Assembly (NCBI GenBank): GCA_002269645.1
Contig: NIVC01002651.1
Coordinates: 1-64,000, forward strand
Direction of reading: 5' to 3'
From: Macrostomum lignano
Lineage: Eukaryota
Length of the DNA stretch: 64,000 nucleotides
Below the pieces are notes generated by a model. The model saw nothing but the letters and a program-made list of their open reading frames with translations, was not told where the DNA came from and did no database searches. The stretch's first letter is position 1. The number at the start of each line of letters is the position of its first letter. Both the position numbers and the translations under genes were made by a program. Positions 3,488 through 40,511 of this stretch are shown here, one piece after another.

Positions 3488-3875
3488 GTCCTCGGATCGG
3501 TCCTATAATACTTTGATTGGTCCTCGGATCGGTCCTATAATACTTTGATAGGTCCTCGGATTGGTCCTATAATACTTTGATAGGTCCTCGGATTGGTCCT
3601 ATAATACTTTGATTGGTCCTCGGATTGGTCCTATAATACTTTGATTGGTCCTCGGATTGGTCCTATAATACTTTGATTGGTCCTCGGATTGGTCCTATAA
3701 TACTTTGATTGGTCCTCGGATTGGTCCTATAATACTTTGATAGGTCCTCGGATCGGTCCTATAATACTTTGATAGGTCCTCGGATTGGTCCTATAATACT
3801 TTGATTGGTCCTCGGATTGGTCCTATAATACTTTGATTGGTCCTCGGATTGGTCCTATAATACTTTGATACGTCC
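3488..3875. repeat. Minisatellite, 32 bp unit (GGTCCTCGGATTGGTCCTATAATACTTTGATT)
   Basis: About 12 near-identical tandem copies. Confidence 0.95.
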
Positions 3876-5225: not shown

Positions 5226-5487
5226 ATAAGCGCTGACAACACCGATTCTAGAAGTAATGTATGCTCAACAACATTAAAATGTCGCCACCTTTGAGAGTGG
5301 GCAGTGAATTCTAGCTCAGTATTGACTTTTGAGTGACGCGACGCAGAGTTGGGCTGGGTGAGAAGGGATTGTGAAGAGTGGAGGGCTTTTTATTATCAAA
5401 ATGGTTGGCCAGGTGATAGACGCTGGTCGAAAGACACTGCTCACTGGGGCAAAGGGTGGCGACTATTCAATGTTGCTGAGTGTACAT

Positions 5488-7420: not shown

Positions 7421-8102
7421 ACTGACAGTACATGTATATTTTTCAAGAGCTTGCATAATATTTATTCATTGGGAAAAAACTATATAAGTGTAGTGCAGCG
7501 CATTACGCGACCCTAGCCCAGCTGTCAAACATTATTAGGATTTATTTTCAAAGCAATTTCTCTGGCCAGAATAATGATTAGCATCGAATTGTAACAGAAT
7601 ATTTGCGTGTCCCTGTGCGTCCCGAAAGTGCACCGAGTACTAAACACTTGATCCCTTGGATTTCGGGGAGTTTAGTGATCTTTGCGTGGGAGAAAGTGAA
7701 CCGCATTGAACAGCTCGTATTAAATTTCTAATCGATAGTTATGCGAGGTTTGCCTGCTAATTAGCCGCTGTTCTACCTGTAATTTTCACCATCTAGAAAG
7801 AGCAGACAGTTCTCAAATATACAGTTACGGGAGCTTGAGTTCCATTGGCAATTAGTGGTTGTCGATGTGCCGAGAATATAAAGTACCAAATTTCTAGCCC
7901 ATTTTGACACCGCAAACCCAGCGAATCCCGGATGGAACTGGATTTGATATTTGTCTCGCTTATAGATAGAATCAATTTTCTCTTATCGGATATTTATCCT
8001 GTCGTGAGGGTATATATAGGCATTAAAACACGCTGGCAACCACTAGCAAGGAGTGCAGTACTTTGCCTTGTTGCCACAAATTAGTCATTCTATACCATCC
8101 CA

Positions 8103-11100
8103 ATGAGATCGCCTTTGCTGCTGGTAATTGTATCGCTTCTTCTACTAGGAGAAGCCGCAGAAATTGCCCGGGCTCTGCGCCTCGCCGTGCTGGCTGAGCC
8201 GGGGCTGCTGCAGCCGGGTCTGGTGCAGCGAGTCGTCGACAGGCGGGTCAACCAGAACCCGCTGCTGTTCCCCGGCCTCGGCGAGTCCAACCCGCTCACC
8301 TGCCAGCTCGTGTCCGCTGACGACTCCGTCTTGGCTGTGCAACAGAGTGAGACATCTATGCTGTTGTTTATCTATGGCCAGTGCATCAATGCACTCTGTT
8401 TATCAATGGCCAGTGCATTGGTGCACTCTGTTTATCTATGGCCAGTGCATCAATGCACTCTGTTTATCTATGGCCAGTGCATTAGTGCACTCTGTTTATC
8501 TATGGCCAGTGCATCAATGCACTCTGTTTATCTATGGCCAGTGCATTGGTGCACTCTGTTTATCTATGGCCAGTGCATCAGTGCACTCTGTTTATCTATG
8601 GCCAGTGAATTAGTGCATTCTGATTATCTGTGGCCAGTGCATCAGTGCATTCTGTTTATCTATGGCCAGTGCATCAGTGCACTCTATCTATCTATGGCCA
8701 GTGCATCAGTGCACTCTGTTTATCTATGGCCAGTGCATCAGTGCACTCTGTTTATCTATGGCCAGTGCATCAGTGCATTCTGTTTATCTATGGCCAGTGC
8801 ATCAGTGCACTCTGTTTATCTATGGCCAGTGTATCAGTGCACTCTGTTTATCTATGGCCAGTGCATCAGTGCACTCTGTTTATCTATGGCCAGTGCATCA
8901 ATGCACTCTGTTTATCTATGGCCAGTGAATTGGTGCACTCAGTTCATATGGCCAGTGCATCAATGCACTTTGTTTATCTATGGCCAGTGTATCAGTGCAC
9001 TCTGTTTATCTATGGCCAGTGCATCAGTGCATTCTGTTTATCTATGGCCAGTGAATCAGTGCATTCTGTTTATCTATGGCCAGTGCATCAGTGCATTCTG
9101 TTTATCTATGGCCAGTGAATCAGTGCACTCTGTTTATCTATGTCTACTGCATCAGTGCACTCTGTTTATCTATGGCCAGTGCATCAGTGCACTCTAATAC
9201 ACTAGCTGTAAAACAAAAACATTCAAATCCTATACTTAAATAATTACCTTGCAGTCTGTCGGTCCAGCGGATTCCACGGCCTCGTGGCAGTCGGCAGCTG
9301 CTCTCTGGGCAGCTCGGTGCACCGGCTGGCCAAGTCCTTGCGAGTGCCCGCCATTTTTGTGCCAGCGGGGGAGCTGTGCCTACTGGACACTGCTGAGTCT
9401 GGTATGTGAGCTGTGCCTGCTGCATGGACACTGCTGAGTCTGGTATGTGAGCTGTGCCAGCTGGACACTGCAGAGTCTGGTATGTGAGCTGTGCCAGCTG
9501 GACACTGCAGAGTCTGGTATGTGAGCTGTGCCAGCTGGACACTGCAGAGTCTGGTATGTGAGCTGTGCCTGCTGGACACTGCAGAGTCTGGTATGTGAGC
9601 TGTGCCTGCTGGACACTGCAGAGTCTGGTATGTGAGCTGTGCCTGCTGCTGGACACTGCAGAGTCTGGTATGTGAGCTGTGCGTGAGCTGTGCGTGAGCT
9701 GTGCGTGAGCTGTGCGTGAGCTGTGCGTGAGCTGTGCGTGAGCTGTGCGTGAGCTGTGCGTGAGCTGTGCGTGAGCTGTGCGTGAGCTGTGCGTGAGCTG
9801 TGCGTGAGCTGTGCGTGAGCTGTGCGTGAGCTGTGCGTGAGCTGTGCGTGAGCTGTGCGTGAGCTGTGCGTGAGCTGTTGTCCAACTCATTCATCCTGCA
9901 GAGTTTGCTTTTGTTGGCGATGATCACCCTAGCAGACTTTTGTCTGCAGTCGTCGCCCTGCTGAAGTCGCACTCAGCCAGCCTCGTGTCCGTGTTCTATG
10001 ACAGTCACCAGGGTATGCGGCTGCTCTAAAATTGCCTTTTGTTATAATAGACTTAAACCATTGCTAATTGATACGTCGTAAACGACAAACTTCAGATGAG
10101 AGCCAGATGCAGTCGCTCCAGTCGCAGCTGTCAGCCTCAGGCATTGCGGCTGTCAGCTTTCAAACTGATGCTCCAACGTCAAACATATCGAGAATTCTGG
10201 CTGACTCCATTAAAAAGAAAATCCGATTCAATCTGATCTTTGCCAGGCCCGATGCTGTCTACAGTCTGATAAGACAGGTGCTGTTTCACACTAGCTTTCA
10301 ATTTCCAAATTTTTGGCCTTTATATTTTGATTGCGAAGCAAATTTTGCAGGCGGTTCAAGCGGAGGCAGTGCAGGCCCACTACTACTGGCTGGCTCTGGA
10401 CGAGGGGCTGCGGCCGAACCAGCTGCTGCGGCTGCTGCCACCCAACGTGTCGGCCAACGTCATGCTGGTCCGCGGCTCGAGTCACGGCCTGCTGGATCCG
10501 CAGCGGCTGCGGCTGAGCGGCGGCTGTCCCGACGCTCTGCGAGCCGTCATGGGCGACTCGTGCGACCCAGGAGCTGTCAGCGTGAGCATCTGAGCATTCT
10601 CATTGAGCCTTGGCATCTGAGCATTCTCATTGAGTCTTGGCATCTGAGCATTCTCATTGAGCCTTGGCATCTGAGCATTCTCATTGAGTCTTGGCATCTG
10701 AGCATTCTCATTGAGCCTCGGCATCTGAGCATTCTCATTGAGTCTTGGCATCTGAGCATTCTCATTGAGCCTTGGCATTCCGGCCATTGTGACCCGTGGT
10801 GGGCAAGCCATTGTGACCCGTGGTGGGCAAGCCATTGTGACCCGTGGTGGGCAAGCCATTGTGACCCGTGGTGGGCAAGCCATTGTGACCCGTGGTGGGC
10901 AAGCCATTGTGACCCACGTGGGCAAGCCATTGTGACCCGTGGTGGGCAAGCCATTGGGACCCGTGGTGGGCAAGCCATTGTGACCCACGTGGGCAAGCCA
11001 TTGTGACCCGTGGTGGGCAAGCCATTGGGACCCGTGGTGGGCAAGCCATTGGGACCCGTGGTGGGCAAGCCATTGTGACCCGTGGTGGGCAAGCCATTGT

Positions 11101-13885
11101 GACCCGTGGTGGGCAAGCCATTGTGACCCGTGGTGGGCAAGCCATTGTGACCCGTGGTGGGCAAGCCATTGTGACCCGTGGTGGGCAAGCCATTGGGACC
11201 CGTGGTGGGCAAGCCATTGGGACCCGTGGTGGGCAAGCCATTGGGACCCGTGGTGGGCAAGCCATTGTGACCCGTGGTGGGCAAGCCATTGTGACCCGTG
11301 GTGGGCAAGCCATTGTGACCCCTCAGCCTCCGTAGCTGCAGATGCGCTCCCAATCGCACTCAGTGAACTCATTTTCTCATCGAACATTCCAGTCTGTTGA
11401 GCTGCGCACCATTGACGCAGTTCTGGCCATGACGAGGGCTGTCCACAGCGTCACAGGCGGCTACACCAGCTCGAGCTCCACCAACGCCAGCTGCAACGGC
11501 GCCACTCGAGCATGGCCTGATGGAGCACTGGCAGCTCGCGCTCTCGCTAAGGTTGTGAGCGACTTGTCTGCATTCCAACACATTCACATCCGGCATCACT
11601 GCTGGGAAACTTTTCATTGGAATTCCAGACCACGGACTTCAACACACTCGGCTCTCTGATTTCCTACAATGGCACCACGAGGCACTTCACCAGCTACATC
11701 GAGGCGGTGTCCACCTTCCACGCCTTCTACACGAGTCCGCTGAGGTACATCGAGAGCGCCAGGTACCACCCCGACAACGCCTCGCTCAGCGTCTCGTTCG
11801 TCTACAAAGACAGGCGACTGGCTTTCCCGAACACCTTCGTGGACTTCAAGAACCGAACTCTGCGAGTCTGCGCTCCGGATGTAGGAGCTAAATTTCAACT
11901 GTCACACTGAAGTATTTGGATTTCATACTTGAAAACTATACCTATTATTGTCTTGAATTTCAGGTTCGTCCCTACGTAATCTACGACGAGAACACTTACG
12001 GAAAGGTCACCGGCCACGCTGAGGATGTGCTCAATATTGTGCGAGAAAATCTGAACTTCTCGTTAGTGACTCGAAAGCGTGAAAATTCTTAGTCAATGCC
12101 ACCAGTTTTAATGCAACTAACATATTGCACCGAGGGGGGGGGCCGTAGCCCAGCGGTAGCGCAGATGCTCTGGTGTCCAGCGACCCAGGCTCGATTCCAA
12201 GTGCAGTCGCATTAATTTGGGGCTGAATTGGAATTTTGGCTTGGCTCTGCTCGTGCAATTAACGGCTTTGAGAGCCAACCCCCCAAGGCGCAGTGAAGTG
12301 TACATGCCTAACGATAAATAAAGTTAGGGCCGCTGTACACTCCTGTGTGAGTGTGTGCCTGCGTACGTATCCGCGCGCTTGTGTGCCTGCTCAGGGGAGT
12401 CGGCGGAATGGGCAGTAATGCCTCTCACCGGTTGTGTGCCTATGTCGCTTAAAAAACATATTGCACCAATATTGCAGAACCATCGTTCTGAAGCCGCCAG
12501 ACGGGCAGTTCGGGGCGCCAATCAATGGCACGCAGCGCTTCTCCGGCTGCATTGGAGAGCTGCAGAATGGCGTGAGTTGCTTCTTGAAGATGGCTTAAGA
12601 GTCGCGACGGCTTCAAGTTGTTTGATAAATCTAGCTGTGAGTTTCAGTTTGTTCATCCGATTTCTCTTCCAGAAAGCAGACTTGGCAGTCGTTTTCGCTG
12701 TCACCAATCTGCGCTATGCCGTCGTGGACTACTTGGACGACTACCTGTACTCATCCAACAACATCCTAGTCCGCATACCACCCCCTGCCAGCAAAATCTG
12801 GAACGTGTTCACGCCGATGACGCTGCAAGTTTGGCTGCTGCTGGCTGCCTCCATCTTCATCGTGCCCTTCATCATCTACCTGCTGGCCTTGTTCAGCCCC
12901 TTCTCCGCTTGGAACCTGAAACTGAGCTTCGCTTTCGCCGACGAGGTCTGGTACAAGGAATACCTGTGGTCCACCATCGGCAGTTTCTTGCAACAGGGTC
13001 AGGACTTTTATCCATTCGCAATGTCGCCCAGAACCGTGATGGTGTTCTGGTGGCTGCTCACCGTTATTATATTTGGTGCATACACTGGAGACCTGACTGC
13101 TCACTTGGCTACATCAGTCAGCAGTTTGACTATTAGGACTCTGGAAGACCTGGTGTCCATGCCTTACTACACTGCTTTAGTACCAAGGGGAACCAACATT
13201 CACACGGCGATCGACATGGCTACGTCGGGACCGATGTTCCAGCTGAAGTCCATGACTGTGCTGGTGCAATCGCACGAGGACTGCGCTAGGAAGGTGAGGA
13301 CTGTGCGCCCCGAATTTGGAATTCTTAGAACAGAAAGGTGCAACGAATCGGTGAAATTATGCGCCTTCAATTTTCAACTTTCAGCTGCTGGCCTCAACCA
13401 ATCCGTACACTGTGTGCATCGCGGATCAGAAGTCCAATCTGTACTTTGCTAACCAATTCTGCGAAGAAATGTACGTGGCTGACGAGTATTTTAACTTCTA
13501 CTATCTGGCGTGGCCTGTGCCCAAGGATGCGTTCTATGCTGACGCCATGAACTTAATGTAAGCCGCTAATCCTGACAGTCATGCCCACAGTGCTCTGATG
13601 CATTTGCTTTATTAATTGACGCGAAATTTACCTTCTAGAATTCGTCGGGCTAAAGAGAACGGCCTCGTTGACATGCTCCGGTTGAAGTACTTCCCAACTA
13701 GCAGCTCAGAGTGCTCAAGTGCACAGGGAGGGATATCGGATGCTGAGCCAATTAACCTGGAGGGCATCGGCGGATCCTGCTTGGTGCCAGGAGTCCTGTA
13801 CTTAATTGGACTGCTCATCCTGCTGCTTGAGCTCTTCTGGACCGCCTGTCTGAACAAGGACCCGCTGCAGTGCGTCTTGTTCTGA
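8103..13885 (+). CDS. Divergent ionotropic glutamate receptor (iGluR/IR-like) copy 1, 12 exons, about 853 aa
   Basis: Exons 8103-8346, 9255-9401, 9902-10012, 10096-10277, 10351-10581, 11393-11554, 11629-11880, 11964-12061, 12478-12571, 12673-13293, 13385-13557, 13639-13885; all GT-AG, phase-consistent, no stops. Signal peptide; ATD-like region; S1 (RPYVI..LNFSTIVLKPPDGQFG..FSGCIGELQNGKADLAVVFAVTNLRYAVVDY); M1; pore loop GSFLQQG; M3 AYTGDLTAHL (SYTANLAAF-like); S2 with paired Cys; M4. Confidence 0.9.
8365..9195 (+). repeat. iGluR intron-1 minisatellite, 32 bp unit (GTTTATCTATGGCCAGTGCATCAGTGCACTCT); also at 17037-17418 and 33017-33462
   Basis: About 26, 12 and 14 copies in paralogs 1, 2 and 3. 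Confidence 0.95.
9371..9878 (+). repeat. iGluR exon-2/intron-2 junction minisatellite (37-41 bp unit containing the donor CTG|GTATGT), followed in copy 1 by an 11 bp (GTGAGCTGTGC)n array; also at 17596-17952 and 33640-33912
   Basis: The unit GAGCTGTGCCAGCTGGACACTGCAGAGTCTG-GTATGT is the last 31 nt of exon 2 plus the donor hexamer. Donors lie at 9402, 9443, 9480, 9517, 9554, 9591, 9628 and 9668. Confidence 0.95.
10586..11320 (+). repeat. iGluR intron-5 double minisatellite: 27 bp (GAGCATTCTCATTGAGCCTTGGCATCT) then 24 bp (GCCATTGTGACCCGTGGTGGGCAA); also at 18786-19332 and 34746-35160
   Basis: Two abutting arrays whose copy numbers differ among the three paralogs. Confidence 0.95.
12132..12454 (+). 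mobile_element. tRNA-derived SINE inserted in intron 8 of iGluR copy 1
   Basis: A box TAGCCCAGCGG, B box GGCTCGATTCC and an A-rich end. A 13 bp TSD AACATATTGCACC lies at 12119-12131 and 12455-12467. The empty site is in copy 2 at 20131-20143. Confidence 0.9.
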
Positions 13886-14429
13886 TGGTTGTTTTGAGCG
13901 TTTGAAAATTTGTTAACTTGCGGTTTTAATCGCAACTTTAAGATGCTTAAGTTTTTTCTTGATTTAATTGTGAAGCACTACTTAGGCATAAAGTTAAGAC
14001 ATTGGAATTTTTGTGTCACCAGAGATCATGTAACTTGTTATACTGAAGTGATCAGCTGACAATTTACCATTAACTGATTTCTCACAGTATTGCACTGGCA
14101 CCTATTCAACTTACTTCGTAGGGTCCCGATATTATCACGTACGCTCGTACACAAATAAAAACCAGTTGCAAGAAAAAATGCACAAACTGTAAGTCCTTAT
14201 ATTAAAATATTATCCCCAATTCACATTGGCGTACTAATCTTGAAGTAAGGAATTATGTAAATTACTGTATATAGGGTTTGAAAGCCTACCAAAGTATAAT
14301 ATATTCATATAAAAAATAATTTCTTTATTTCCAGTCAAACCTAATCTGGATTTGCAAGTTAATCTATATAGGTTTCAGGCTAAATTCATTTGGGGCTCAG
14401 GTGGCAACATTTTTTTTCTAGGGCTTCGT

Positions 14430-15852
<1,423 letters not shown>

Positions 15853-16763
15853 GTTTTGAAGGTTCATGCAATGAACTGAGTATTCGCAATAAGAGACTTT
15901 AGTTTTTCGGCTACTTTTAGCCAAACGAATAAAAACCAAGAGCATAGAGCATACTCTCCCTGAAGAGACTGAAAATTATATAATTTAACCTGAAAATTAA
16001 ATAAGTGTACAAGTAGTTATTAAGTATACAAAAAATTCATGGTATGCTGAAAAGTACGCGTAGGTGAATCGATACAAATACATGTCAATGAAGCCCTCTC
16101 CTAAACAGTCAGTTGTACCCCCGCCAGTCGATTGTGCTCGGCAGGCAAACTGTGGCAGACAAATGACAGCATCCCTGTGCAGTGTCACTCAACACTGCTT
16201 AAACGGGGTGTGGCTACGGTGTACTTTCTGCGTGCAGCTGCACCGGTGCACAGCGCCAGACATATTGGTGCAAACGTCAGCACGATAAGGAAATTCCTAA
16301 TTACTTTTGTCTTGCCATTTGGGTTCCCGATTATCAACTGCACGCAGTTCCCCCTGCCCTAACTGGCTATTGTGGATCGCTTTGGAGGCAAAAGGAGTCC
16401 TGATTAGTGCGACAAAAGTAATGATACACGAAAATGAAAGCTGAAGCCGTTAATTCGCGAGCCAAATATCGATTCGAGCATCGCTGAGACTCTGATCCCG
16501 TTAAGAAACTGTCCTTAGTGCATCGATTCGACCCCAAAAACACCCAACCAGCTTAGTTATCTCAGTGTCGCCTCCGGGAAGTTCTTGTCTATGTTCAATT
16601 AACGGTTTTTCTGGTCGATATCGATTGATTATTCACTGAGACACGGCGATATGACCAACTTCTGTCTATATAATAACTCACCTGATCCTCTGCCGCTGGC
16701 TTTTCTTTGCTCCGCAATCTAAGAGTCAAGAGTCTGCCTCTAAAGCTACGGATTTTATTCACA

Positions 16764-19700
16764 ATGCTGGCGCTGCTAATGTTGTCGCTTCTTCTACTAG
16801 GAGAAGCCGCAGAAATTGCCCGGGCCCTGCGCCTCGCCGTGCTGGCTGAGCCGGGGCTGCTGCAGCCGGGTCTGGTGCAGCGAGTCGTCGACAGGCGGGT
16901 CAACCAGAACCCGCTGCTGTTCCCCGGCCTCAGCGAGTCCAACCCGCTCACCTGCCAGCTCGTGTCCGCTGACGACTCCGTCTTGGCTGTGCAACAGAGT
17001 GAGACATCTATGCAGAGCTTACCAGCAACAGCCATTGTTTATCTATGGCCAGTGCATCAATGCACTCTGTTTATCTATGGCCAGTGTATCAGTGCATTCT
17101 GTTTATCTATGGCCAGTGCATCAGTGCACTCTGTTTATCTATGGCCAGTGTATCAGTGCACTCTGTTTATCTATGGCCAGTGTATCAGTGCACTCTGTTT
17201 ATCTATGGCCAGTGCATCAGTGCACTCTGTTTATCTATGGCCAGTGCATCAGTGCACTCTGTTTATCTATGGCCAGTGAATTAGTGCACTCTGTTTATCT
17301 ATGGCCAGTGAATTAGTGCACTCTGTTTATCTATGGCCAGTGAATTAGTGCACTCTGTTTATCTATGGCCAGTGAATTAGTGCACTCTGTTTATCTATGG
17401 CCAGTGCATCAGTGCACTCTAATACACTAGCTGTAAAACAATAACATTCAAATCCTATACTTAATTAATTACCTTGCAGTCTGTCGGTCCAGCGGATTCC
17501 ACGGCCTCGTGGCAGTCGGCAGCTGCTCTCTGGGCAGCTCGGTGCACCGGCTGGCCAAGTCCTTGCGAGTGCCCGCCATTTTTGTGCCAGCGGGGGAGCT
17601 GTGCCAGCTGGACACTGCAGAGTCTGGTATGTGAGCTGTGCCTGCTGGACACTGCTGAGTCTGGTATGTGAGCTGTGCCAGCTGGACACTGCTGAGTCTG
17701 GTATGTGAGCTGTGCCTGCTGGACACTGCTGAGTCTGGTTTGTGAGCTGTGCCAGCTGGACACTGCAGAGTCTGGTTTGTGAGCTGTGCCTGCTGCATGG
17801 ACACTGCTGAGTCTGCTTTGTGAGCTGTGCCTGCTGCATGGACACTGCTGAGTCTGCTTTGTGAGCTGTGCCTGCTGCATGGACACTGCTGAGTCTGCTT
17901 TGTGAGCTGTGCCTGCTGCATGGACACTGCTGAGTCTGGTATGTGAGCTGTGTAGCCAGGTGCATCAAGACCCGTCCGCCAACCCAATTGCAGAGTTCTC
18001 ATTCGTTGGCGAAGACCATCCCATCGGCCGCATTGGGTCTATCGAAGCCTTGCTTCGGTCAAAGTCAGCCAGTGTCGTGTCGATATTTTTCGACAATCAT
18101 CAGAGTGAGCACAGGCGTTTTGAACTCAACTCTGCCGTTCATCACTTCTTTTAAATGCCTAGTTAATACAAAAAATTGAAAAAAAACACTTCAGATGAGC
18201 AGCTCATTCGGTCCCTGCACAACCAGTTGGCTGATGCGGGCATTGCGACAGTCAGCTTTCAGCTTGACACCATTGGAGTGAACCTGTCAAGGATTTTGAA
18301 AGATTCCATCAAGAAGAAAGTGAAGTTCAATGTAGTACTGGCAGAGCCGGATGCAGTTTACAGTTTAATTGAACAGGTAAATTCGGCTTCTTTGACAGAC
18401 TTGTGCCTGAAACTCTGTGCCTTAGGGGTCGGCCACTGTGGTTGTGAATTGCAAAGGTGGGCGACACGTGACAATTTTTTAACTTCATAATGTATCACCT
18501 GTACTGTTGTGTTTTTGCAGGCGGTTCAAGCGGAGGCAGTGCAGGCCCACTACTACTGGCTGGCTCTGGACGAGGGGCTGCGGCCGAACCAGCTGCTGCG
18601 GCTGCTGCCGCCCAACGTGTCGGCCAACGTCATGCTGGTCCGCGGCTCGAGTCACGGCCTGCTGGATCCGCAGCGGCTGCGGCTGAGCGGCGGCTGTCCC
18701 GACGCTCTGCGAGCCGTCATGGGCGACTCGTGCGATCCAGGAGCTGTCAGCGTGAGCACTCTGGCTGCTGGGACAGCAACTTCATGAGCCTTGGCATCTG
18801 AGCATTCTCATTGAGCCTTGGTATCTGAGCATTCTCATTGAGCCTTGGTATCTGAGCATTCTCATTGAGCCTTGGTATCTGAGCATTCTCATTGAGCCTT
18901 GGTATCTGAGAATTCTCATTGAGCCTTGGCATCTGAGCATTCTCATTGAGCCTTGGTATCTGAGCATTCTCATTGAGCCTTGGCATCTGAGCATTCTCAT
19001 TGAGCCTTGGCATCTGAGCATTCTCATTGAGCCTTGGCATCTGAGAATTCTCATTGAGCCTCGGCATCTGAGCATTCTCATTGAGTCTTGGCATCTGAGC
19101 ATTCTCATTAAGCCTTGGCATCTGAGCATTCTAATTGAGTCTTGGCATTCCGGCCATTGTGACCCGTGGTGGGCAAGCCATTGTGACCCGTGGTGGGCAA
19201 GCCATTGTGACCCGTGGTGGGCAAGCCATTGTGACCCGTGGTGGGCAAGCCATTGTGACCCGTGGTGGGCAAGCCATTGTGACCCGTGGTGGGCAAGCCA
19301 TTGTGACCCGTGGTGGGCAAGCCATTGTGACCCCTCAGCCTCCGTAGCTGCAGATGCGCTCCCGGTTGCACTCAGTGAACTCATTCTCTCATCGAACATT
19401 CCAGTCTGTTGAGCTGCGCACCATTGATGCAGTTCTGGCCATGACGAGGGCTGTCCACAGCGTCACAGGCGGCTACACCAGCTCGAGCTCCACCAACGCC
19501 AGCTGCAACGGCGCCACTCGAGCGTGGCCTGATGGAACACTGGCAGCTCGCGCTCTCGCTAAGGTTGTGAGCGACTTGTCTGCATTCCAACACATTCACA
19601 TCCGGCATCACTGATGGGAAACTTTTCATTGGAATTCCAGACCACGGACTTCAACACACTCGGCTCTCTGATTTCCTACAATGGCACCACGAGGCACTTC

Positions 19701-22096
19701 ACCAGCTACATCGAGGCGGTGTCCACCTTCCACGCCTTCTACACGAGTCCGCTGAGGTACATCGAGAGCGCCAGATACCACCCCGACAACGCCTCGCTCA
19801 GCGTCTCGTTCGTCTACAAAGACAGGCGACTGGCTTTCCCGAACACCTTCGTGGACTTCAAGAACCGAACTCTGCGAGTCTGCGCTCCGGATGTAGGAGC
19901 TAAATTTCAACTGTCACACTGAAGTATTTGGATTTCATACTTGAAAACTATACCTATTATTGTCTTGAATTTCAGGTTCGTCCCTACGTAATCTACGACG
20001 AGAACACTTACGGAAAGGTCACCGGCCACGCTGAGGATGTGCTTAATATTGTGCGAGAAAATCTGAACTTCTCGTTAGTGACTCGAAAGCGTGAAAATTC
20101 TTAGTCAATGCCACCAGTTTTTATGCAACTAACATATTGCACCAATATTGCAGAACCATCGTTCTGAAGCCGCCAGACGGGCAGTTCGGGGCGCCAATCA
20201 ATGGCACGCAGCGCTTCTCCGGCTGCATTGGAGAGCTGCAGAATGGCGTGAGTTGCTTCTTGAAGATGGCTTAAGAGTCGCGACGGCTTCAAGTTGTTTG
20301 ATAAATCTAGCTGTGAGTTTCAGTTTGTTCATCCGATTTCTCTTCCAGAAAGCAGACTTGGCAGTCGTTTTCGCTGTCACCAATCTGCGCTATGCCGTCG
20401 TGGACTACTTGGATGACTACCTGTACTCATCCAACAACATCCTGGTCCGCATACCGCCTCCTGCCAGCAAAATCTGGAACGTGTTCACGCCGATGACGCT
20501 GCAAGTTTGGCTGCTGCTGGCTGCCTCCATCTTCATCGTGCCCTTCATCATCTACCTGTTGGCCTTGTTCAGCCCCTTCTCCGCTTGGAACCTGAAACTG
20601 AGCTTCGCTTTCGCCGACGAGGTCTGGTACAAGGAATACCTGTGGTCCACCATTGGCAGTTTCTTGCAACAGGGTCAGGACTTTTATCCATTCGCAATGT
20701 CGCCCAGAACCGTGATGGTGTTCTGGTGGCTGCTCACCGTTATTATATTTGGTGCATACACTGGAGACCTGACTGCTCACTTGGCTACATCAGTCAGCAG
20801 TTTGACTATTAGGACTCTGGAAGACCTGGTGTCCATGCCTTACTACACTGCTTTAGTACCAAGGGGAACAAACATTCACACGGCGATTGACATGGCTACG
20901 TCGGGACCGATGTTCCAGCTGAAGTCCATGACTGTGCTGGTGCAGTCGCACGAGGACTGCGCTAGGAAGGTGAGGATTGTGCGCCCCGAATTTTGAATTC
21001 TTAGAACAGAAAGGTGCAACGAATCGGTGAAATCATGCGCCTTTAAATTTTCAACTTTCAGCTGCTGGCCTCAACCAATCCGTACACTGTGTGCATCGCG
21101 GATCAGAAGTCCAATCTGTACTTTGCTAATCAATTCTGCGAAAAAATGTACGTGGCTGACGAGTATTTTAACTTCTACTATCTGGCGTGGCCTGTGCCCA
21201 AGGATGCGTTCTATGCTGACGCCATGAACTTAATGTAAGCCGCTAATCCTGACAGTCATGCTCACAGTGCTCTGATGCATTAGCTTTGGAATGGGCGTGT
21301 AACCTCGCGGCTAAGCTGCTGGTTTTGCTAAGGATTACGAGTGGACTATTATCTGCTGTACTGATTTGAGATTTGGTAGAATCGCTGCCACCAGGCTTCC
21401 TGCTTCCCTAATCCTATTATTTTGAGACAAAGGAAGAACTCAGGAAAACCAAATTATTTGACAAAAGTTTATACTTCAAAAAAATAGAACAGCATGCAAT
21501 GGTTATTGTGCGAGAGTTTTAGGCATTGACTACCTGGTAGTGTACTGTTTTAGGCATCGACTACCACCAACAGTTTTACGTATCTCCCAATATTTCCCCG
21601 CCTCTTACCTAATCCTACTTGAGACTACGCAAGTCCGCGAGCGAACGAAAGATCTGCTTACCCAAGCTTTAAACTGCTCTATTCTTCTAAGGAATCCCGG
21701 AAACCTGCGATTTTCCCCGGCTCTAATTACTTTCCCAAACCTAAACTACTGACAGTAGGCAAAAAGCATATCTGCTTCGCTACTAATTCCCATTCCTAAA
21801 ATACTGCCCTACTACAGCTTTATTAATTGACGCGAAATTTACCTTCTAGAATTCGTCGGGCTAAAGAGAACGGCCTCGTTGACATGCTCCGGTTGAAGTA
21901 CTTCCCAACTAGCAGCTCAGAGTGCTCAAGTGCACAGGGAGGGATATCGGATGCTGAGCCAATTAACCTGGAGGGCATCGGCGGATCCTGCTTGGTGCCA
22001 GGAGTCCTGTATTTAATTGGACTGCTCATCCTGCTGCTTGAGCTCTTCTGGACCGCCTGTCTGAACAAGGACCCGCTGCAGTGCGTCTTGTTCTGA
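16764..22096 (+). CDS. Divergent iGluR/IR-like copy 2 (chimeric), 12 exons, about 850 aa
   Basis: Exons 16764-16998, 17480-17626, 17994-18104, 18195-18376, 18521-18751, 19405-19566, 19641-19892, 19976-20073, 20154-20247, 20349-20969, 21062-21234, 21850-22096. Intact and phase-consistent, with the same motifs as copy 1. Confidence 0.9.
21288..21815. mobile_element. 528 bp insertion/deletion in intron 11 of copy 2, flanked by a 6 bp direct repeat AGCTTT
   Basis: The intron is 81 bp in copy 1 (single TGCTTT site) and 615 bp in copy 2, with AGCTTT at 21282-21287 and 21816-21821. GGAATGGG at the left end has its inverse CCCATTCC near the right end. Confidence 0.45.
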
Positions 22097-22639
22097 TGGT
22101 TGTTTTGAGCGTTTGAAAATTTGTTAACTTGCGGTTTTAATCGCAACTTTAAGATGCTTAAGTTTTTTCTTGATTTAATTGTGAAGCACTACTTAGGCAT
22201 AAAGTTAAGACATTGGAATTTTTGTGTCACCAGAGATCATGTAACTTGTTATACTGAAGTGATCAGCTGACAATTTACCATTAACTGATTTCTCACAGTA
22301 TTGCACTGGCACCTATTCAACTTACTTCGTAGGGTCCCGATATTATCACGTACGCTCGTACACAAATAAAAACCAGTTGCAAGAAAAAATGCACAAACTG
22401 TAAGTCCTTATATTAAAATATTATCCCCAATTCACATTGGCGTACTAATCATGAAGTAAGGAATTATGTAAATTACTGTATATAGGGTTTGAAAGCCTAC
22501 CAAAGTATAATATATTCATATAAAAAATAATTTCTTTATTTCCAGTCAAACCTAATCTGGATTTGCAAGTTAATCTATTTAGGTTTCAGGCTAAATTCAT
22601 TTGGGGCTCAGGTGGCAACATTTTTTTTCTAGGGCTTCG

Positions 22640-25123
<2,484 letters not shown>

Positions 25124-25332
25124 TGTTGTAGAAATTGAACAAGTCTGAGGGCCGTCAATTTAGCCAACAAGAAAAATCAACAATTAAGCGCTCACTGAGA
25201 GGCCTGCGAATATATTATATATTTAGCTCCGTCTCTCGCAACAACCACCCCACCATGCGCACAGAGGAGGGGGGACGCCAAGCGTACATACAAACCAGAG
25301 TATGCTAGGCAGGCACACAACTAACCCTAACA
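25124..25332 (-). repeat. BEL 3' LTR (209 bp)
   Basis: About 97% identical over 159 bp to 29779-29937; the PPT abuts it at 25333-25340. Confidence 0.9.
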
Positions 25333-25741
25333 CTCCCCCTAATGATGCTTCAACATTACAGTACTTAACACTGATATTCGAAAAAGGAAACTCACTATGA
25401 ACTTAAAAGAAATTAAACGAAACGAATAGCAAAAAAAACAAACGAACAACAAAAAACGCTCTAACATTACAACAGACTTGATAAATAAAAATGTGACGCA
25501 CCATCACTACAGTTTTAAGTTAACGAAAAAGCAGAAACACAAAAGGCGCCAAGGAGCAAAAATGTAAGCACCGTCACCAGCGTACTGTAAATTAGAGAAA
25601 CCCAAATGTCGCGTTGAAAAGTTTACTCAAAGCACGAGCACGATGCTGGGATAAGAACTGGAGATTGAAACTAAGGAGAGCTAAAGACTGAGATGTCAGA
25701 TGTCAATAGTCACTGTCAGCTTAAGAAAAGTCAATAGCATT

Positions 25742-28700
25742 TCATTCATTCACGGCTTCTAGCAAAATCAGGTTCTCAACCGGCCAGCGAATCAAGCATC
25801 TCCTGGGTCCGCGGCCTGGCTTTTGCGCGACTCGAACTGTTGCCAATTTTACTGCTCCGTCTCGTCCCGGATGCACCGCCTCGATAATCCCAATACACCA
25901 GGTGAGCCTCGGTTGGCCAGCTTCGCCTTTCACCAGGACGATGTCACCGATCGTTGCCTCTCGGATCTCGCCGTGCTTAGGATTGAGCCGATGTTCACGC
26001 AGGCTGGTCAGATACTGCCGCTCCCAGCAGTCCCAGAAGGTGTGAAGTCTGGTGCGCATTCGCTTCAGCATTTTTGGCAACGGTAGCAGAAGATCCGGCG
26101 CGCAACTAGAAGTAGGTTCCGCTGTCAGCCGCTGCAACACCAGGAAGTGTGTTGCGGTGTCAGAACTTCTCCTTCGGGCTCGGCATCCACGTAGAGCAGA
26201 GGGCGGCTGTTGAGCACCGCCTCCACCCCATGAGCAGTGTCAGCAGTTCGTCCAGTGTTAGACTTGCATTCAGAAGGGTTTTGCGCAGCGCCAGTTTGAT
26301 GTCCTTAATCAGTCGCTCCTAGAAGCCGCCTTTCCAGGGTGCGCGTTCGGTGATGAACTGCCAGGTAATCTTCCGAGCGGCGCAGGACTCCTGAACCTTT
26401 TGACTCTCCGATGCTTGTAAATCCGCGCGGCTTTGACGAATGTCTTAGCGTTATCGCTGATGAGACTAGGGATACCTCTCCTTGCACAGAATCTCCTTAG
26501 GGCTCTTAAGAAGGTCTCAGTTGTTAGATCTTTCACCAGTTCTAGATGAAGCGCTCGCGTTGCTGCGCAGGTAAACACTAAAATTTAGCCCTTCTCGACA
26601 GCAGTGTCTTCTCTCAGTTTGACCGGACCACATTAGTCGAGCCCGCTCCACTCAAATGCTCTCATTGCTTTCACGCGAGATTCTGGCAACGCAGGAACTT
26701 GCTTCACAGCGAACGGGAGTCCCTAACGGGAGAACTGGAACGGGAGAACGGGAGAACTGCAGACGACGCATTTTCCAAGAATTGCCTTCACTCGCTGCCT
26801 GCCACGGATCAGCCAAAACTTCTCTCGCAGTTTGCAAAGGGTGCTTGGAACTCCCCGGTGCAGAACTTTGCTGTGCGCGTCTCGGATGAGGAGAACTTCT
26901 AGATGAGTCTAGTTCGGGATGAGGATGGGGCAATCAGCAGCTGCACCAACGTTTGATTCTCTCAATCGACCCCGACTTCGGAGCAGACCTTTGCTGTCGA
27001 TGAAGAGATTCAGCTGCTTTGCGAGGTCCGTAGATGCTGTCGACCTTTCAAAGTGAGCAATCTCAGCAGGGAAACTCCTTCGTTGTACATCTTTCAGCCA
27101 ATCAGGACCATGCCACCAGCTGGATCAGTCTTCAGCTTGTCGACCGAAGTGCCGCGAGATGCAACATCGGCAGGGTTCTCACTGCCTGGCACGTGTCGCC
27201 ATGATTCCTCCGGAAGCAGCCGGCGGATCTCAGAGACTCGGTTGTGAACAAAGAGCTTCCATGGCTTGTGCTGTCGGATCCAGTACAGAGTATCGGCACT
27301 ATCTGTCCAGCAGAAAACTTGGCGGACTTGAGGATGTTGACTCAGGGCTGAAATCACTAGTCTGGCCAGTATCAGGGCACCTAATAGTTCCAGCCGAGGA
27401 ACCGACAGGGCCGATAGTGGAGCCACTCTGGCCTTCGCCGTCACCAGGGTACAGCTGACAGAACCGTCGATGTACTGAACTCGTAGGTAGAGACAAGCCG
27501 CGTAGCGCTTTGCGGATGCGTCACAGAAGCCATGCAGCTGCATCTCTTGGACCACCCGTGTCGCGAAAAGCACCAGCCGCGGTACCTGGAATCGTGCTTT
27601 CAGCATGTCCTGCAGCCACTTCTGCCACAGCTGTTCAGTCGGCTCATCCAGCGGGCAATCCCAAGCAACTTTGTGAGCACAGAGTGTCTGAAACATTGTT
27701 TTCGGCCAAGTCAGTATTGGAACTAGGAAGCCGAGAGGATCATAGACACGTGCCAGAAGCTGTAGCATGACTCGCTTGGATTGCGTAGCTCTGAGTAACT
27801 CCTCTGCTGGTGAGAACCGAAGCACGAACACGTCCGATCCGGTTTCCCAGTGCAACCCAAGGACCTTCGACAACACGCCCTCCTCACTCAATGAGGCGGA
27901 GGAATAGCTCCCCTGGTCCTCCGTCATTCTGAGAGTCTCTACTGACAGGGCTGGAGCCAGAATGTCCTGGTCTGTAGCGCTAGCTCGAACTGCGGACTAA
28001 ACCGCTTTACTGTTGGACTGCCAATGGCGTAGATTCATACCTGCCTGGCGGAAGACGTGACGGGATTTTTGGATGAGTTCCATGGCTTGCCGTTCGCTTG
28101 CACACCCAGAGATATGTCCACATAGATCTCTCCACAAACTGCGCATCCTGGTCCCGATGAGATGCTAAATGATGTTGAATGACCGTCTTCAGAATCCCAG
28201 GTGAGCAGGTGAGTCGGAATACCAAAGCGGCGTAACGAAGAACAACGAGTGGCGATTCAGCTCGACTTGGATCCTGTGGCCAGAGAAACCGCAGTGAATC
28301 CCGATCTTCTTCAGCAATGCGAATCTGAAGAAACGCCTCAATATCAGCTGTAAGAGCGATCGGATGAAACCGGAATGCTTGAAGAAGACGAGGAATCTCG
28401 ACCAACGAACACGATCCAGTCTCCAGACACTCATTCAAGAACGAGCTCCACCGATCTCGCTTAGCACTGGCATCGAAAACTACTCTGACCTTCGTCGACT
28501 CTGCTTCAGGACGAATCACTGCTCGGTGAGGCAAGTAGTGGACAAGATGGTGCGTGCCGTCGGGAACCTCATCCACTATTCCAGCTTCTTTCTGGCTCAT
28601 CAGAATGTGGTGGTATTCCTGCAGCAGTGCGGGTTCACGGCGCAGCCTGCTCAGGTTGATCTGAAGCCTCTTGAATGCCACGTCGAAGTTGTCCGGTAAG

Positions 28701-29330
28701 GTCAATTCCTCCTCGGGAAGCCTCCACGGCAGCTTGACTGAGTAGCGCCCATCCTGGAATTGACTGCCTAATTCGAAAGGCCGATGCTCAGGTTCGGATG
28801 CGCTGGTAATGCCAATGCCTTCAAGCGTCCAAAACGTCTCCATGGAACAGTGGTCAAGGCCTTTGAAGCACTTGCTCTTTTTTGTCTTCCAGTCCTCCTG
28901 CCGAAATGGCGTCGGACAAGGAGCCACACAGGAGCCACCAAAGCTGACTAGCTACCCCAACCAGCCCGGTGCTGATTTCAGAACGATCCACCTGTCCTGT
29001 GACAAGGTCATCGAACTGGTCAGCTCCTATGAGGATGCTGATCTCTGGATGCTGCTCGCTGCCGATGTCCCAGTCTGCAGCCATCTGGTGAAATCAGTAC
29101 AGCTCCCGCAGTAGGAAGAACTACTGTCTGGGCCTTGGTGACCATCGCCATAGTCTTTACTTCGTGACTCTTGACACCCTGCGCGGCCGACTGTTCGACT
29201 TTCTTCTTCTCTGAACCCGCCGTATCGAAGGTGCAATAGGCGTCTTGTCTGCCGGTCTCGGTGGCTGTTCCACTGGCGCAGCGCAGACTGGGATGATGCT
29301 TTAACCACAGATCTTATAAACACTAGATAG
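25742..29330 (-). pseudogene. Frameshifted BEL/Pao pol (protease, RT, RNase H, integrase, DUF5641)
   Basis: Recognisable motifs: ISILIGADQF; ALTADIEAFLQI..DRDSLRFLW; LHGFCDAS..YAACLY; AKARVAP..VPRLELLGA; WTDS; WRHVPGSENPADVASRG; FTCAATRALHLELV..FLRALRRFCARRG..SDNAKTF; FWDCWERQYL..GDIVLVK..PGRDG. These are spread over at least six ORF fragments. Confidence 0.93.
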
Positions 29331-29778
29331 GCCACTCCAGCTAATTTATTCACAACACGACGTTTACTCTACTTTCTGCTTAGTAGTAGTAAATACATTT
29401 TAGCGTTATTTATATTTAAAAAGCAAAAAAAACAAAATGAATGCAGTGCAGCAATTGCATTGATTTTAATTGCAAAAAGAAACTTATAATTATACTTTCT
29501 ACAATTCAAAGCAACATAGTGAATGCTTTAGATTGTATTGAAGGCTATATTATTGTAGTCAACTATTGTACATTTAGCAAATACGACCTATATCATATAC
29601 TCTATATTCGTGTAGCAAAATAGAAAGATTTCTCCTCTTATTCAGCTCATCTGTTTCTGAAACTTTCGCAGCGTGCTGTCGAAGCACAGGGTCGCCAGTC
29701 GCCTTTGTTCAGAGGCAGCATTCAGCACGGCTTAAGAGATGAAAAAAACTGGCAAATGCGCCTCTTCAAATCCCCCTT

Positions 29779-29937
29779 AATCAACAATTAAGCGCTCACT
29801 GAGAGGCCTGCGAATATATTAAATATTTAGCTCAGTCTCTCGCAACAACCACCCCACCATGCGCACAGAGGAGGGGGGGACGCCAAGCGTAAATACAAAC
29901 CAGAGGATGCTAGGCAGGCACACAACTAACCCTAACA
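29779..29937 (-). repeat. BEL 5' LTR, truncated (about 50 bp at the U5 end and the PBS missing)
   Basis: Matches 25175-25332 with 4 substitutions and one homopolymer indel. Confidence 0.85.
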
Positions 29938-31832
<1,895 letters not shown>

Positions 31833-40306: not shown

Positions 40307-40511
40307 CTTTCTATTGATAACAGTGTCTATTCAATGCCACCCATAATTATTGAATGCACCGCATGTAAGAACAATGCCCTATGTTCAAATCATGGCCGCA
40401 CTTTACTACTTGCTAAGCGAAGTAGTCGCATCGCAAACAACTCTATTGCAAACTCAATAAAGTTCTATCTGACACTTTTAACGGCCTCATTATCGCCAGC
40501 TGTCGTTTGGA

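What the first reader, a model, noticed from the sequence alone, without database searches (positions are those of the whole stretch)
15852..22640. Middle iGluR gene is an anti-Lepore chimera whose crossover swaps the ATD and LBD/channel modules
Seen: the upstream DNA, exons 1-6 and introns 1-6 of copy 2 match copy 3. Its intron 7 through exon 12, 3' flank and the start of the (GTTA)n array match copy 1. The last copy-3-type base is 19614 (cactgAtggg) and the first copy-1-type base is 19896 (gtaG, versus gtaA in copy 3). The crossover therefore lies in or immediately before exon 7, which encodes the ATD end and the linker into S1 (FPNTFVDFKNRTLRVCAPD). Known: the order A, C/A, C is the anti-Lepore product of unequal crossing-over. 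Inference: a new intact receptor was made by clean domain shuffling, pairing one paralog's assembly/modulatory domain with the other's ligand-binding domain and pore.
Basis: partly seen in the sequence, partly recalled or inferred. Interest (0 to 1): 0.8.

Follow-up and report, generated by a model that had tools for sequence, protein, structure and literature searches.

The report
Hybrid glutamate-receptor gene from unequal crossover
The middle of three tandem glutamate-receptor genes in this Macrostomum lignano flatworm sequence is an intact hybrid, with the front half of the downstream gene and the back half of the upstream gene; this is the textbook product of unequal crossing-over, so it is a tidy but not surprising case.

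Summary
Copy 2 (CDS 16764-22096) equals copy 3 from the end of the upstream (GTTA)n array (15853) to 19614. It equals copy 1 from 19896 through its 3' flank into the next array. The 281-bp switch interval covers the end of intron 6, all of exon 7 and 3 bp of intron 7. It is identical in all three copies except for one change private to copy 2. In coding sites, exons 1-6 give 130 copy-3-type against 1 copy-1-type. Exons 8-12 give 172 copy-1-type against 8.

All three genes have 12 exons, canonical splice sites and open frames (871, 867 and 866 aa). Exon 7 runs from the end of the amino-terminal domain (ATD) about nine residues into the first ligand-binding segment (S1).

Best explanation: homologous unequal crossover between the two parent genes, confidence about 0.78.

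Caveats:
- The two intergenic spacers differ by a 4.8-kb BEL/Pao retrotransposon.
- The parents' ATDs differ mainly in exons 3-4.
- M. lignano assemblies are known to hold chimeric stacks of its three subgenomes, so an assembly artefact keeps about 0.15.

UniProt model A0A1I8HNV3 runs from copy 1 into a gene that only copy 2 can match. Expression and function are untested.

The parts
8103..13885 (+). Copy 1 (parent A) iGluR gene, ATG to stop, 12 exons, 871 aa. Exons: 8103-8346, 9255-9401, 9902-10012, 10096-10277, 10351-10581, 11342-11554, 11629-11880, 11964-12061, 12478-12571, 12673-13293, 13385-13557, 13639-13885.
   Evidence: Hand-built model mapped from copy 2. Open frame with canonical GT-AG at every junction. 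It has its own start codon and an unrelated upstream region.
14429..15852 (+). Spacer 1: a (GTTA)n array of 1.4 kb. Its head matches array 2 and its tail matches array 3.
   Evidence: TRF. Variant-unit maps: 198 bp exact common prefix with array 2. The last ~90 units share the variant order of array 3, with 125 bp exact.
15853..19614 (+). Copy-3-type (C) part of copy 2: 911 bp of 5' flank and promoter, exons 1-6, introns 1-5 and most of intron 6.
   Evidence: 843 bp exact, then about 0.5% substitutions outside the minisatellites. 130:1 coding informative sites.
16764..22096 (+). Copy 2 (hybrid) CDS, 867 aa. Exons: 16764-16998, 17480-17626, 17994-18104, 18195-18376, 18521-18751, 19354-19566, 19641-19892, 19976-20073, 20154-20247, 20349-20969, 21062-21234, 21850-22096.
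   Evidence: splice sites, open frame. Exons 8-12 are identical to UniProt A0A1I8JJ64 (P0005), an exact substring at aa 458-867. Pfam Lig_chan, Lig_chan-Glu_bd and a weak ANF_receptor. The exon 2/3 junction and the exon 6 acceptor (19354 or 19405) stay ambiguous.
19615..19895 (+). Crossover interval: last 26 bp of intron 6, exon 7 (19641-19892) and 3 bp of intron 7. It lies at the 3' edge of a block from about 19334 to 19895 where A and C are about 98.5% identical.
   Evidence: A-versus-C identity collapses at 19896.
19896..22639 (+). Copy-1-type (A) part of copy 2: introns 7-11, exons 8-12 and 543 bp of 3' flank.
   Evidence: 22 substitutions in about 2210 bp. 172:8 coding informative sites.
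20388..20497 (+). Patch in exon 10 where copy 2 is identical to copy 3 and copy 1 differs at 4 synonymous sites (20414, 20444, 20456, 20459). Possibly a short gene-conversion tract.
   Evidence: Suggestive only.
22640..25123 (+). Spacer 2, left (GTTA)n array, 2.5 kb.
25124..29937 (-). Degenerate BEL/Pao LTR retrotransposon inside spacer 2, absent from spacer 1. LTRs of 158 bp at 25175-25332 and 29779-29937.
   Evidence: Direct repeats. LTR alignment: 4 substitutions plus 1 indel. Pfam Peptidase_A17 at 1.4e-46 and DUF5641. ORFs are broken.
29938..31832 (+). Spacer 2, right (GTTA)n array, 1.9 kb.
32744..40306 (+). Copy 3 (parent C) iGluR gene, 866 aa. Exons: 32744-32978, 33524-33670, 33956-34066, 34156-34337, 34482-34712, 35182-35394, 35469-35720, 36269-36366, 36452-36545, 37112-37732, 39011-39183, 40063-40306.
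   Evidence: Open frame. Exon lengths equal those of copy 2 except exon 12, which is one codon shorter.

Best explanation
The locus held two old, diverged tandem iGluR paralogues in the same orientation. A is copy 1 and C is copy 3. They are separated by a (GTTA)n-rich spacer.

Earlier gene conversion had made exons 1-2 and exons 5-7 of A and C nearly identical. Exons 3-4 and everything from intron 7 onward stayed diverged.

A homologous but misaligned exchange then took place. It joined C on one chromatid or homologue to A on the other. It fell within the last 281 bp of the exon 6-7 identity block.

The exchange duplicated the segment 'A 3' half - spacer - C 5' half' in tandem. The one new junction is copy 2. 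It carries C's promoter, signal peptide and ATD up to exon 6, then the shared exon 7, then A's LBD, pore, M4 and tail.

The junction lies in sequence that encodes the same amino acids in both parents, so the frame and the domain boundary are preserved.

Shown: the sequence mosaic, the intact frames, the position of the domain boundary, and purifying selection on the copies.

Inferred: that the exchange was a crossover rather than another homology-driven event; that it occurred between chromosomes already differing in the spacer; that the gene is expressed and forms a working subunit.
For: - Ancestry switches once, between 19614 and 19896. Coding informative sites are 130:1 before the switch and 172:8 after it.
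- Flanks follow the halves. There are 843 bp of exact identity with copy 3 upstream. Downstream, the 60 bp before the array and the first 198 bp of the array are identical to copy 1. The tail of array 1 has the same variant order as the tail of array 3.
- Copy 1 has no (GTTA)n array upstream and copy 3 has none downstream. Conversion tracts would therefore lack an outer homology anchor. A single crossover needs none.
- A-versus-C identity is 98.5% across exons 6-7 and collapses at 19896. The exchange sits where homology exists.
- All three genes are open with identical exon structure.
- Copy 1 and copy 2 differ in exons 8-12 by 12 synonymous changes and 1 replacement (omega 0.025). The differences are therefore not sequencing noise, and the sequences are under constraint.
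- Copy 1 carries a private SINE with a 12-bp target duplication. Copy 2 shows the empty site.
- Outside support comes from UniProt A0A1I8HNV3 (P0004), an M. lignano gene model. It strings together exons 3-5 and 11-12 that match only copy 1, then an exon 6 that matches only copies 2 and 3, then an exon 10 that matches only copies 1 and 2. Its tail can therefore only be copy 2 lying downstream of copy 1.
- UniProt A0A1I8JJ64 (P0005) equals copy 2 exons 8-12 exactly, including the copy-2-specific Lys.
Against: - The spacers are unequal. Spacer 1 is a 1.4-kb array. Spacer 2 is 2.5 kb of array, a 4.8-kb BEL/Pao element and 1.9 kb of array.
- LTR divergence (4/158) is higher than the duplicate divergence (Fisher p = 0.03). 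The element is therefore probably older than the duplicates' divergence. A sister-chromatid exchange would have copied it into both spacers.
- Divergence of the two halves is not quite equal: 0.5% against 1.0%, p = 0.06.
- M. lignano DV1 has three subgenomes 1.4-2.4% apart that differ mostly by indels. Its assemblies are reported to contain collapsed or chimeric sequences (PMC10733133; PMC5730564). That is the same kind of difference as seen between the two duplicated units.
- P0004 probably derives from the same PacBio reads as any later DV1 assembly (PMC5730564). It is therefore not independent data.
- No transcript evidence was available.
Confidence: 0.78

Rival explanations
1. Assembly artefact. 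The true locus has two genes (A - spacer - C) on each subgenome or haplotype. The assembler stacked two versions of the segment 'A 3' half - spacer - C 5' half' in tandem. One version lacks the BEL/Pao element and the other has it. The assembler stepped from C to A through the near-identical exon 5-7 block.
For: - It explains the unequal spacers with no extra biological event.
- The two units differ by 0.5-1% substitutions plus TE and minisatellite indels. That is the profile reported for M. lignano subgenomes (PMC10733133).
- Mlig_3_7 has only 64% error-free bases by REAPR and 872 coverage-distribution errors (PMC5730564).
- The ML2-derived UniProt set holds redundant copies of the A-type 3' half (P0005, P0011, P0013, P0014).
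Against: - The shared block free of length-variable minisatellites is only about 560 bp. The long reads needed to assemble 1.4-2.5 kb (GTTA)n arrays span that easily.
- There are no Ns or gaps in the window.
- A gene model from what appears to be another assembly (P0004) contains the same copy 1 -> copy 2 adjacency and the C-type exon 6 / A-type exon 10 combination.
- PMC5730564 says the two published DV1 assemblies used different algorithms.
Confidence: 0.15
2. Gene conversion rather than crossover. Three genes already existed, either A, A', C or A, C', C. A long conversion tract then overwrote one half of the middle gene with the sequence of the other parent.
For: Gene conversion is clearly active in this cluster. 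Exons 1-2 and 5-7 of A and C have dS of 0.03-0.05, against 0.5 to saturated elsewhere. A 110-bp patch in exon 10 of copy 2 matches copy 3.
Against: - The tract would have to be at least 3.8 kb in the 5' case or 2.7 kb in the 3' case.
- It would have to run through introns and flanks that are unalignable between A and C (46-57% identity).
- It would have to end in a (GTTA)n array that the recipient's presumed original flank does not have. There is no such array upstream of copy 1 or downstream of copy 3.
- It needs two events where a crossover needs one.
Confidence: 0.05

Closest known systems
Haemoglobin anti-Lepore chromosomes (delta, beta-delta hybrid, beta). Textbook knowledge, not tested here.
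   Same: Two tandem paralogues. A misaligned homologous exchange inside the genes. The product carries both parents plus a middle hybrid with the 5' part of the downstream gene and the 3' part of the upstream gene. The frame is kept.
   Different: Here the parents are far more diverged (dS 0.5 or more in the 3' half). The exchange was confined to a block homogenised earlier by conversion. The two spacers are unequal. The junction coincides with a boundary between protein domains. No reciprocal Lepore chromosome is known.
Other hybrid genes made by non-allelic homologous recombination (NAHR): the CYP11B1/CYP11B2 chimera, red/green opsin hybrids (own knowledge), and the FCGR3B/A chimeric gene (PMC8183472, title listed).
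   Same: Hybrid genes made by NAHR between tandem paralogues. They pair one gene's regulatory and 5' part with the other's 3' coding part.
   Different: Those are human polymorphisms with population and functional data. This case rests on one assembled sequence plus one database gene model.
Expansion of iGluR/IR families by non-allelic homologous recombination (Croset et al. 2010, PMC2924276).
   Same: The same superfamily. Tandem arrays are attributed to NAHR.
   Different: That paper infers whole-gene duplications from clustering. A text search of it found no mention of chimeras. Here the breakpoint lies inside the gene and recombines ATD with LBD and channel.
Laboratory ATD-swap chimeras of AMPA, kainate and NMDA receptor subunits (own knowledge).
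   Same: The ATD of one subunit is joined to the LBD and pore of another at the ATD-S1 linker. The iGluR design tolerates this because it is modular.
   Different: Those are engineered. This one is natural, and the parents' ATDs differ mainly in a 98-residue cassette (exons 3-4).

Membership tests
Anti-Lepore-type hybrid gene (unequal crossover / NAHR tandem duplication) | Three genes in the same orientation, in the order parent 1 - hybrid - parent 2 | tested here: met
   tblastn and gene models: three + strand copies at 8103-13885, 16764-22096 and 32744-40306.
Anti-Lepore-type hybrid gene (unequal crossover / NAHR tandem duplication) | The hybrid has the 5' part of the downstream parent and the 3' part of the upstream parent, with a single switch | tested here: met
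   130:1 before 19614 and 172:8 after 19896. One possible 110-bp exception in exon 10.
Anti-Lepore-type hybrid gene (unequal crossover / NAHR tandem duplication) | The switch lies in a tract of identity between the parents | tested here: met
   281 bp identical in copies 1 and 3, at the edge of a block that is 98.5% identical.
Anti-Lepore-type hybrid gene (unequal crossover / NAHR tandem duplication) | The two intergenic spacers are copies of one another | tested here: inconclusive
   The spacer edges match (198 bp and 125 bp exact, same variant order). The interiors differ by a 4.8-kb BEL/Pao element and by array length. This fits an exchange between differing homologues or a later event.
Anti-Lepore-type hybrid gene (unequal crossover / NAHR tandem duplication) | The structure exists on a real chromosome; two-gene and Lepore haplotypes exist | not testable with these tools
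   No reads or population data are available. Indirect support only, from UniProt A0A1I8HNV3 and A0A1I8JJ64.
Ionotropic glutamate receptor (AMPA/kainate/delta-like) | S1-pore-S2 core: Lig_chan-Glu_bd and Lig_chan domains, three membrane segments plus a pore loop | tested here: met
   Pfam PF10613 at 47.7 bits (cut-off 30) and PF00060 at 73.9 bits (cut-off 30.8). PDB GluD1 6ksp at E = 1.2e-36 over residues 449-855. The QQG pore motif is present. The SYTANLAAF motif is diverged to AYTGDLTAHL.
Ionotropic glutamate receptor (AMPA/kainate/delta-like) | LIVBP-like amino-terminal domain | tested here: inconclusive
   PF01094 at 24.6 bits, just under the 25.4-bit cut-off, covering residues 95-374. Weak alignment to the GluD1 ATD over residues 58-255.
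Ionotropic glutamate receptor (AMPA/kainate/delta-like) | Ligand gating and ion conduction | not testable with these tools
   The S1 arginine aligns with that of GluD1. No functional data.
False tandem duplication in an assembly | Gap or contig boundary at the junction, or copies identical apart from errors | tested here: not met
   No N in the window. The copies differ by a SINE with target duplication, a 534-bp indel, and substitutions that are 12:1 synonymous.
False tandem duplication in an assembly | Halved read depth and no reads that span the junction | not testable with these tools

The most novel reading that the evidence does not exclude
The cluster may be a standing module-shuffling system. 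Exons 1-2 and 5-7 are kept near-identical among paralogues by conversion and serve as swap points. The exon 3-4 ATD cassette (58% amino-acid identity, dS saturated) and the LBD/pore half (85% identity) are kept distinct by selection. Crossovers in the homogenised blocks would then repeatedly make new ATD-by-LBD combinations. Copy 2 would be the latest of these, retained under purifying selection.
Probability: 0.15. Interest if true: 0.55.

Novelty: new member of a known kind. Interest (0 to 1): 0.35.

Why it matters
If the structure is real, both parents and their in-frame hybrid sit side by side, only 0.5-1% diverged from the parental halves. That is a natural ATD-swap experiment in an iGluR family. 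It would let one ask what the ATD (mainly the exon 3-4 cassette) and the promoter contribute, against the LBD and pore, to assembly, ligand response and expression. It also shows how earlier gene conversion can create the homology that later allows domain-level recombination between otherwise diverged paralogues. For M. lignano genomics, it is a concrete locus for testing whether tandem near-duplicates in the assemblies are real or are stacked subgenomes.

Tried and rejected
- Self-BLAST without masking was swamped by the (GTTA)n arrays and minisatellites. I replaced it with region-to-region BLAST and MAFFT.
- Gene conversion as the main cause was rejected. It lacks outer homology anchors and needs tract lengths of 2.7-3.8 kb.
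- A wholesale C-to-copy-2 conversion of exon 10 was rejected. Copy-1-type sites interleave everywhere except 20388-20497.
- I treated the 4.8-kb spacer insert as possibly unique ancestral DNA. It is a degenerate BEL/Pao LTR element.
- The look-up of encoding contigs for P0004 found nothing on record. The contig behind that gene model could not be read.
- The first protein search, with exon 10, gave only distant M. lignano paralogues.
- The third search found no copy-3-type 3' half in the database. No Lepore-type or alternative combination could be looked for.
- The Wasik et al. 2015 genome paper is not in the searchable library.
- Other long ORFs in the window gave nothing relevant in Pfam.
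Full report
**What is in the window.** The 64-kb window has no Ns and is extremely rich in tandem repeats (55 TRF rows). Three iGluR genes lie on the + strand (tblastn). Three (GTTA)n arrays are interleaved with them, at 14429-15852, 22640-25123 and 29938-31832.

The closest database proteins are all from the flatworm Macrostomum lignano. One of them, UniProt A0A1I8HNV3 (P0004), is 98% identical over its best local alignment. The window is therefore M. lignano or a very close relative.

**Gene models.** I built the copy 2 model by hand from open frames and GT-AG sites. It has 12 exons, 2604 nt and 867 aa, with every junction canonical. Mapping it onto the other copies gave the same exon lengths and junctions, with two exceptions. 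Copy 1 has its own start codon at 8103 and an unrelated upstream region. Exon 12 of copy 3 is one codon shorter. All three frames are open: 871, 867 and 866 aa.

Exons 8-12 of my copy 2 model are an exact substring match to UniProt A0A1I8JJ64 (P0005). That confirms those junctions independently. Two points stay ambiguous and do not affect the finding:
- The exon 2 donor lies inside the first unit of a 37-bp minisatellite, and an alternative exon 2/3 pairing is also in frame.
- Exon 6 may start at 19354 or at 19405. P0004 uses the second site.

**Family.** Pfam finds Lig_chan (73.9 bits), Lig_chan-Glu_bd (47.7 bits) and SBP_bac_3. It also finds ANF_receptor just under its cut-off (24.6 against 25.4 bits, residues 95-374). 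The best solved relatives are GluD1 (6ksp, E = 1.2e-36, residues 449-855), then the AMPA and kainate receptors. S1 starts at about residue 449 (RTLRVCAPDVRPYVIY aligns to LTLKVVTVLEEPFVMV). Exon 7 encodes residues 374-457. It therefore runs from the last part of the ATD, through the linker, about nine residues into S1.

**The observation.**
- The three-way alignment shows copy 2 at 97.5-100% identity to copy 3 from 15853 to about 19850 outside the minisatellites.
- From 19853 to 22639 it is 96-100% identical to copy 1. Identity to copy 3 there falls to 48-92%, with only the exons alignable.
- The site list gives the last copy-3-type base at 19614 and the first copy-1-type base at 19896.
- The 281 bp between them are identical in all three copies, apart from a private A at 19775.
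- In coding sites, exons 1-6 give 130 copy-3-type against 1 copy-1-type. Exon 7 has none. Exons 8-12 give 172 copy-1-type against 8 copy-3-type.
- The flanks follow the halves. There are 843 bp of exact identity with copy 3 upstream. Downstream, the 60 bp before the array and the first 198 bp of the array are identical to copy 1.

**The parents are themselves mosaics.** A (copy 1) against C (copy 3) gives:
- dS 0.05 in exons 1-2;
- saturated dS and dN 0.32 in exons 3-4 (58% amino-acid identity);
- dS 0.03 in exons 5-7;
- dS 0.51 with omega 0.17 in exons 8-12.

A-versus-C nucleotide identity of 98.5% ends abruptly at 19896. Earlier conversion events thus created the homology in which the exchange happened.

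At the protein level, the hybrid takes 49 C-type residues in the ATD, 41 of them in exons 3-4. It takes 61 A-type residues in the LBD, membrane domain and tail. So the 'ATD swap' is real. It amounts to the exon 3-4 cassette, the signal-peptide start and the promoter. By analogy with the LIVBP fold, the cassette is probably much of the lower ATD lobe. That is an inference and was not tested.

**Mechanism.** A tandem duplication has one novel junction. Here it lies in 281 bp of perfect homology between two paralogues in the same orientation. The duplicated unit is 'A 3' half - spacer - C 5' half'. This is the anti-Lepore geometry.

Gene conversion is a poor alternative. The tract would be 2.7-3.8 kb. 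It would cross unalignable introns and flanks. It would end in a (GTTA)n array that neither copy 1's upstream side nor copy 3's downstream side possesses.

**The spacer discrepancy.** A sister-chromatid exchange predicts two identical spacers. They are not identical.
- Spacer 1 is a single 1.4-kb array.
- Spacer 2 is array, then a degenerate minus-strand BEL/Pao LTR retrotransposon, then array. The element has Peptidase_A17 at 1.4e-46 and 158-bp LTRs with 4 substitutions and 1 indel.
- Variant-unit maps show that array 1 has the head of array 2 and the tail of array 3. Its middle is made of amplified tail-type modules.
- LTR divergence (4/158) exceeds that of the duplicated units (p = 0.03). 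The element is probably older than the duplicates' divergence.

The simplest reading is that the exchange took place between homologues or homeologues that already differed in the spacer. That gives the observed structure in one step. In that case the 0.5-1% divergence does not date the event. Alternatively, the element was lost from spacer 1 by array-array recombination.

**Are the copies real and constrained?**
- Copy 1 and copy 2 differ in exons 8-12 by 12 synonymous changes and 1 replacement, E/K at 21143 (omega 0.025).
- Copy 1 has a tRNA-like SINE with a 12-bp target duplication (ACATATTGCACC) in intron 8. Copy 2 shows the empty site. A relative of the SINE lies at 43031-43339 on the minus strand.
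- Copy 1 also lacks 534 bp of intron 11, at a GCTTT microhomology.

These are biological differences, not consensus noise. They would look the same whether the units are tandem paralogues or versions from different subgenomes.

**The artefact question.** M. lignano DV1 carries three subgenomes with 1.4-2.4% SNP divergence. They differ mostly by indels. Its assemblies are reported to contain collapsed or chimeric sequences and misrepresented paralogues (PMC10733133). Mlig_3_7 has 64% error-free bases by REAPR (PMC5730564). A false stacking of two versions of the unit, through the exon 5-7 block, would produce exactly this sequence and would explain the unequal spacers.

Against the artefact:
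- The clean shared block is only about 560 bp.
- The window has no gaps.
- P0004 strings together exons 3-5 and 11-12 that match only copy 1. It then has an exon 6 that matches only copies 2 and 3, then an exon 10 that matches only copies 1 and 2. Its tail can only be copy 2 lying downstream of copy 1.

P0004 starts inside intron 2 of copy 1 and ends in the middle of exon 10 of copy 2. The same UniProt set holds several redundant and frameshift-patched versions of the A-type 3' half (P0011, P0013, P0014). I therefore think these models come from a different, more fragmented assembly than the window. My own knowledge is that the A0A1I8 accessions are WormBase ParaSite models on the ML2 assembly. 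PMC5730564 states that Mlig_3_7 re-used the published PacBio reads with a different algorithm. That makes P0004 an independent assembly but not independent data. I put the real hybrid at about 0.78, the artefact at about 0.15 and conversion at about 0.05.

**Unexplained details.**
- Synonymous divergence between copies 1 and 2 in exons 8-12 (dS 0.043) is about five times the divergence of the adjoining introns and 3' flank (0.9%; p = 6e-4).
- Four of the twelve synonymous sites fall in 20388-20497, where copy 2 equals copy 3 exactly. This suggests a short conversion patch. The rest remain unexplained.
- Copy 2 and copy 3 differ at five sites within 16696-16735, after 843 identical bases.
- No copy-3-type 3' half is present among the M. 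lignano proteins found.

**Comparison and novelty.** Hybrid genes from unequal crossover are textbook biology (haemoglobin anti-Lepore, CYP11B1/B2, opsins, FCGR3B/A). iGluR/IR families are known to expand by non-allelic homologous recombination (PMC2924276). What is new is a case in this family where the breakpoint falls at the ATD-S1 boundary and both parents are retained next to the hybrid. This is a new member of a known kind. It is useful as a natural domain-swap and as a test locus for M. lignano assembly quality, but it is not surprising to a specialist. Expression and function were not testable here.

Noticed in passing
window 12120-12467; relative at 43031-43339 (-): A tRNA-like SINE lies in intron 8 of copy 1. 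The body is 12132-12455, starting GGGGCCGTAGCCCAGCGGTAGCGC and ending in A5, flanked by a 12-bp target duplication (ACATATTGCACC). Copy 2 has the empty site. An 81%-identical copy lies elsewhere in the window.
   Followed up: partly
window 25124-29937 (-): A degenerate BEL/Pao LTR retrotransposon (Peptidase_A17, DUF5641, broken ORFs) is embedded between two (GTTA)n arrays. Its LTRs are 158 bp and about 97% identical. About 50 bp of non-LTR, non-array sequence (25124-25174) lies between the left LTR and the array.
   Followed up: partly
window 13558-13638 versus 21235-21849: Intron 11 is 81 bp in copy 1 and 615 bp in copy 2 (880 bp in copy 3). The 534-bp difference is bounded by a GCTTT microhomology, which suggests a deletion in copy 1.
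   Followed up: partly
introns 1, 2 and 5 of all three copies (e.g. 8365-9195, 17036-17420, 33016-33464; 9371-9878, 17596-17952, 33640-33914; 10586-11321, 18785-19333, 34746-35161): The same four intronic minisatellites (units of 32, 37, 27 and 24 bp) occur in all three genes with different copy numbers. For example, the 32-mer has 26, 12 and 14 units and the 24-mer has 22.5, 7.5 and 6.5. The 37-mer unit contains the GTATGT used as the exon 2 donor, so every unit offers a potential donor.
   Followed up: no
window 20388-20497: In a 110-bp stretch of exon 10, copy 2 is identical to copy 3 while copy 1 differs at 4 synonymous sites. This may be a short conversion tract inside the otherwise copy-1-type half.
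   Followed up: partly
window 19976-22096 versus 11964-13885: Synonymous divergence between copies 1 and 2 (dS 0.043) is about five times the intron and flank divergence (0.9%); Fisher p = 6e-4. Only partly accounted for by the exon 10 patch.
   Followed up: partly
window 16696-16735: Five substitutions between copy 2 and copy 3 cluster in 40 bp of the 5' UTR, just after 843 bp of perfect identity. The source is unknown, and copy 1 is unalignable there.
   Followed up: no
UniProt A0A1I8HNV3 (P0004) versus window 9889-20735: This database protein is a fused, exon-skipping gene model that runs from copy 1 into copy 2. It is a mis-annotation, but it is informative about gene order.
   Followed up: yes
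window 53275-53838 (-): This ORF has a weak CUB-domain match (E = 5.4e-05). It may be an exon of a neighbouring gene.
   Followed up: no
window 1-8000 and 40400-64000: Many long minisatellite and microsatellite arrays occur here, for example a 28-mer at 5488-7418, a 34-mer at 40510-41946, (GACA)n at 52066-53466 and a 16-mer at 55500-57406. This fits the reported repeat richness of M. lignano.
   Followed up: no
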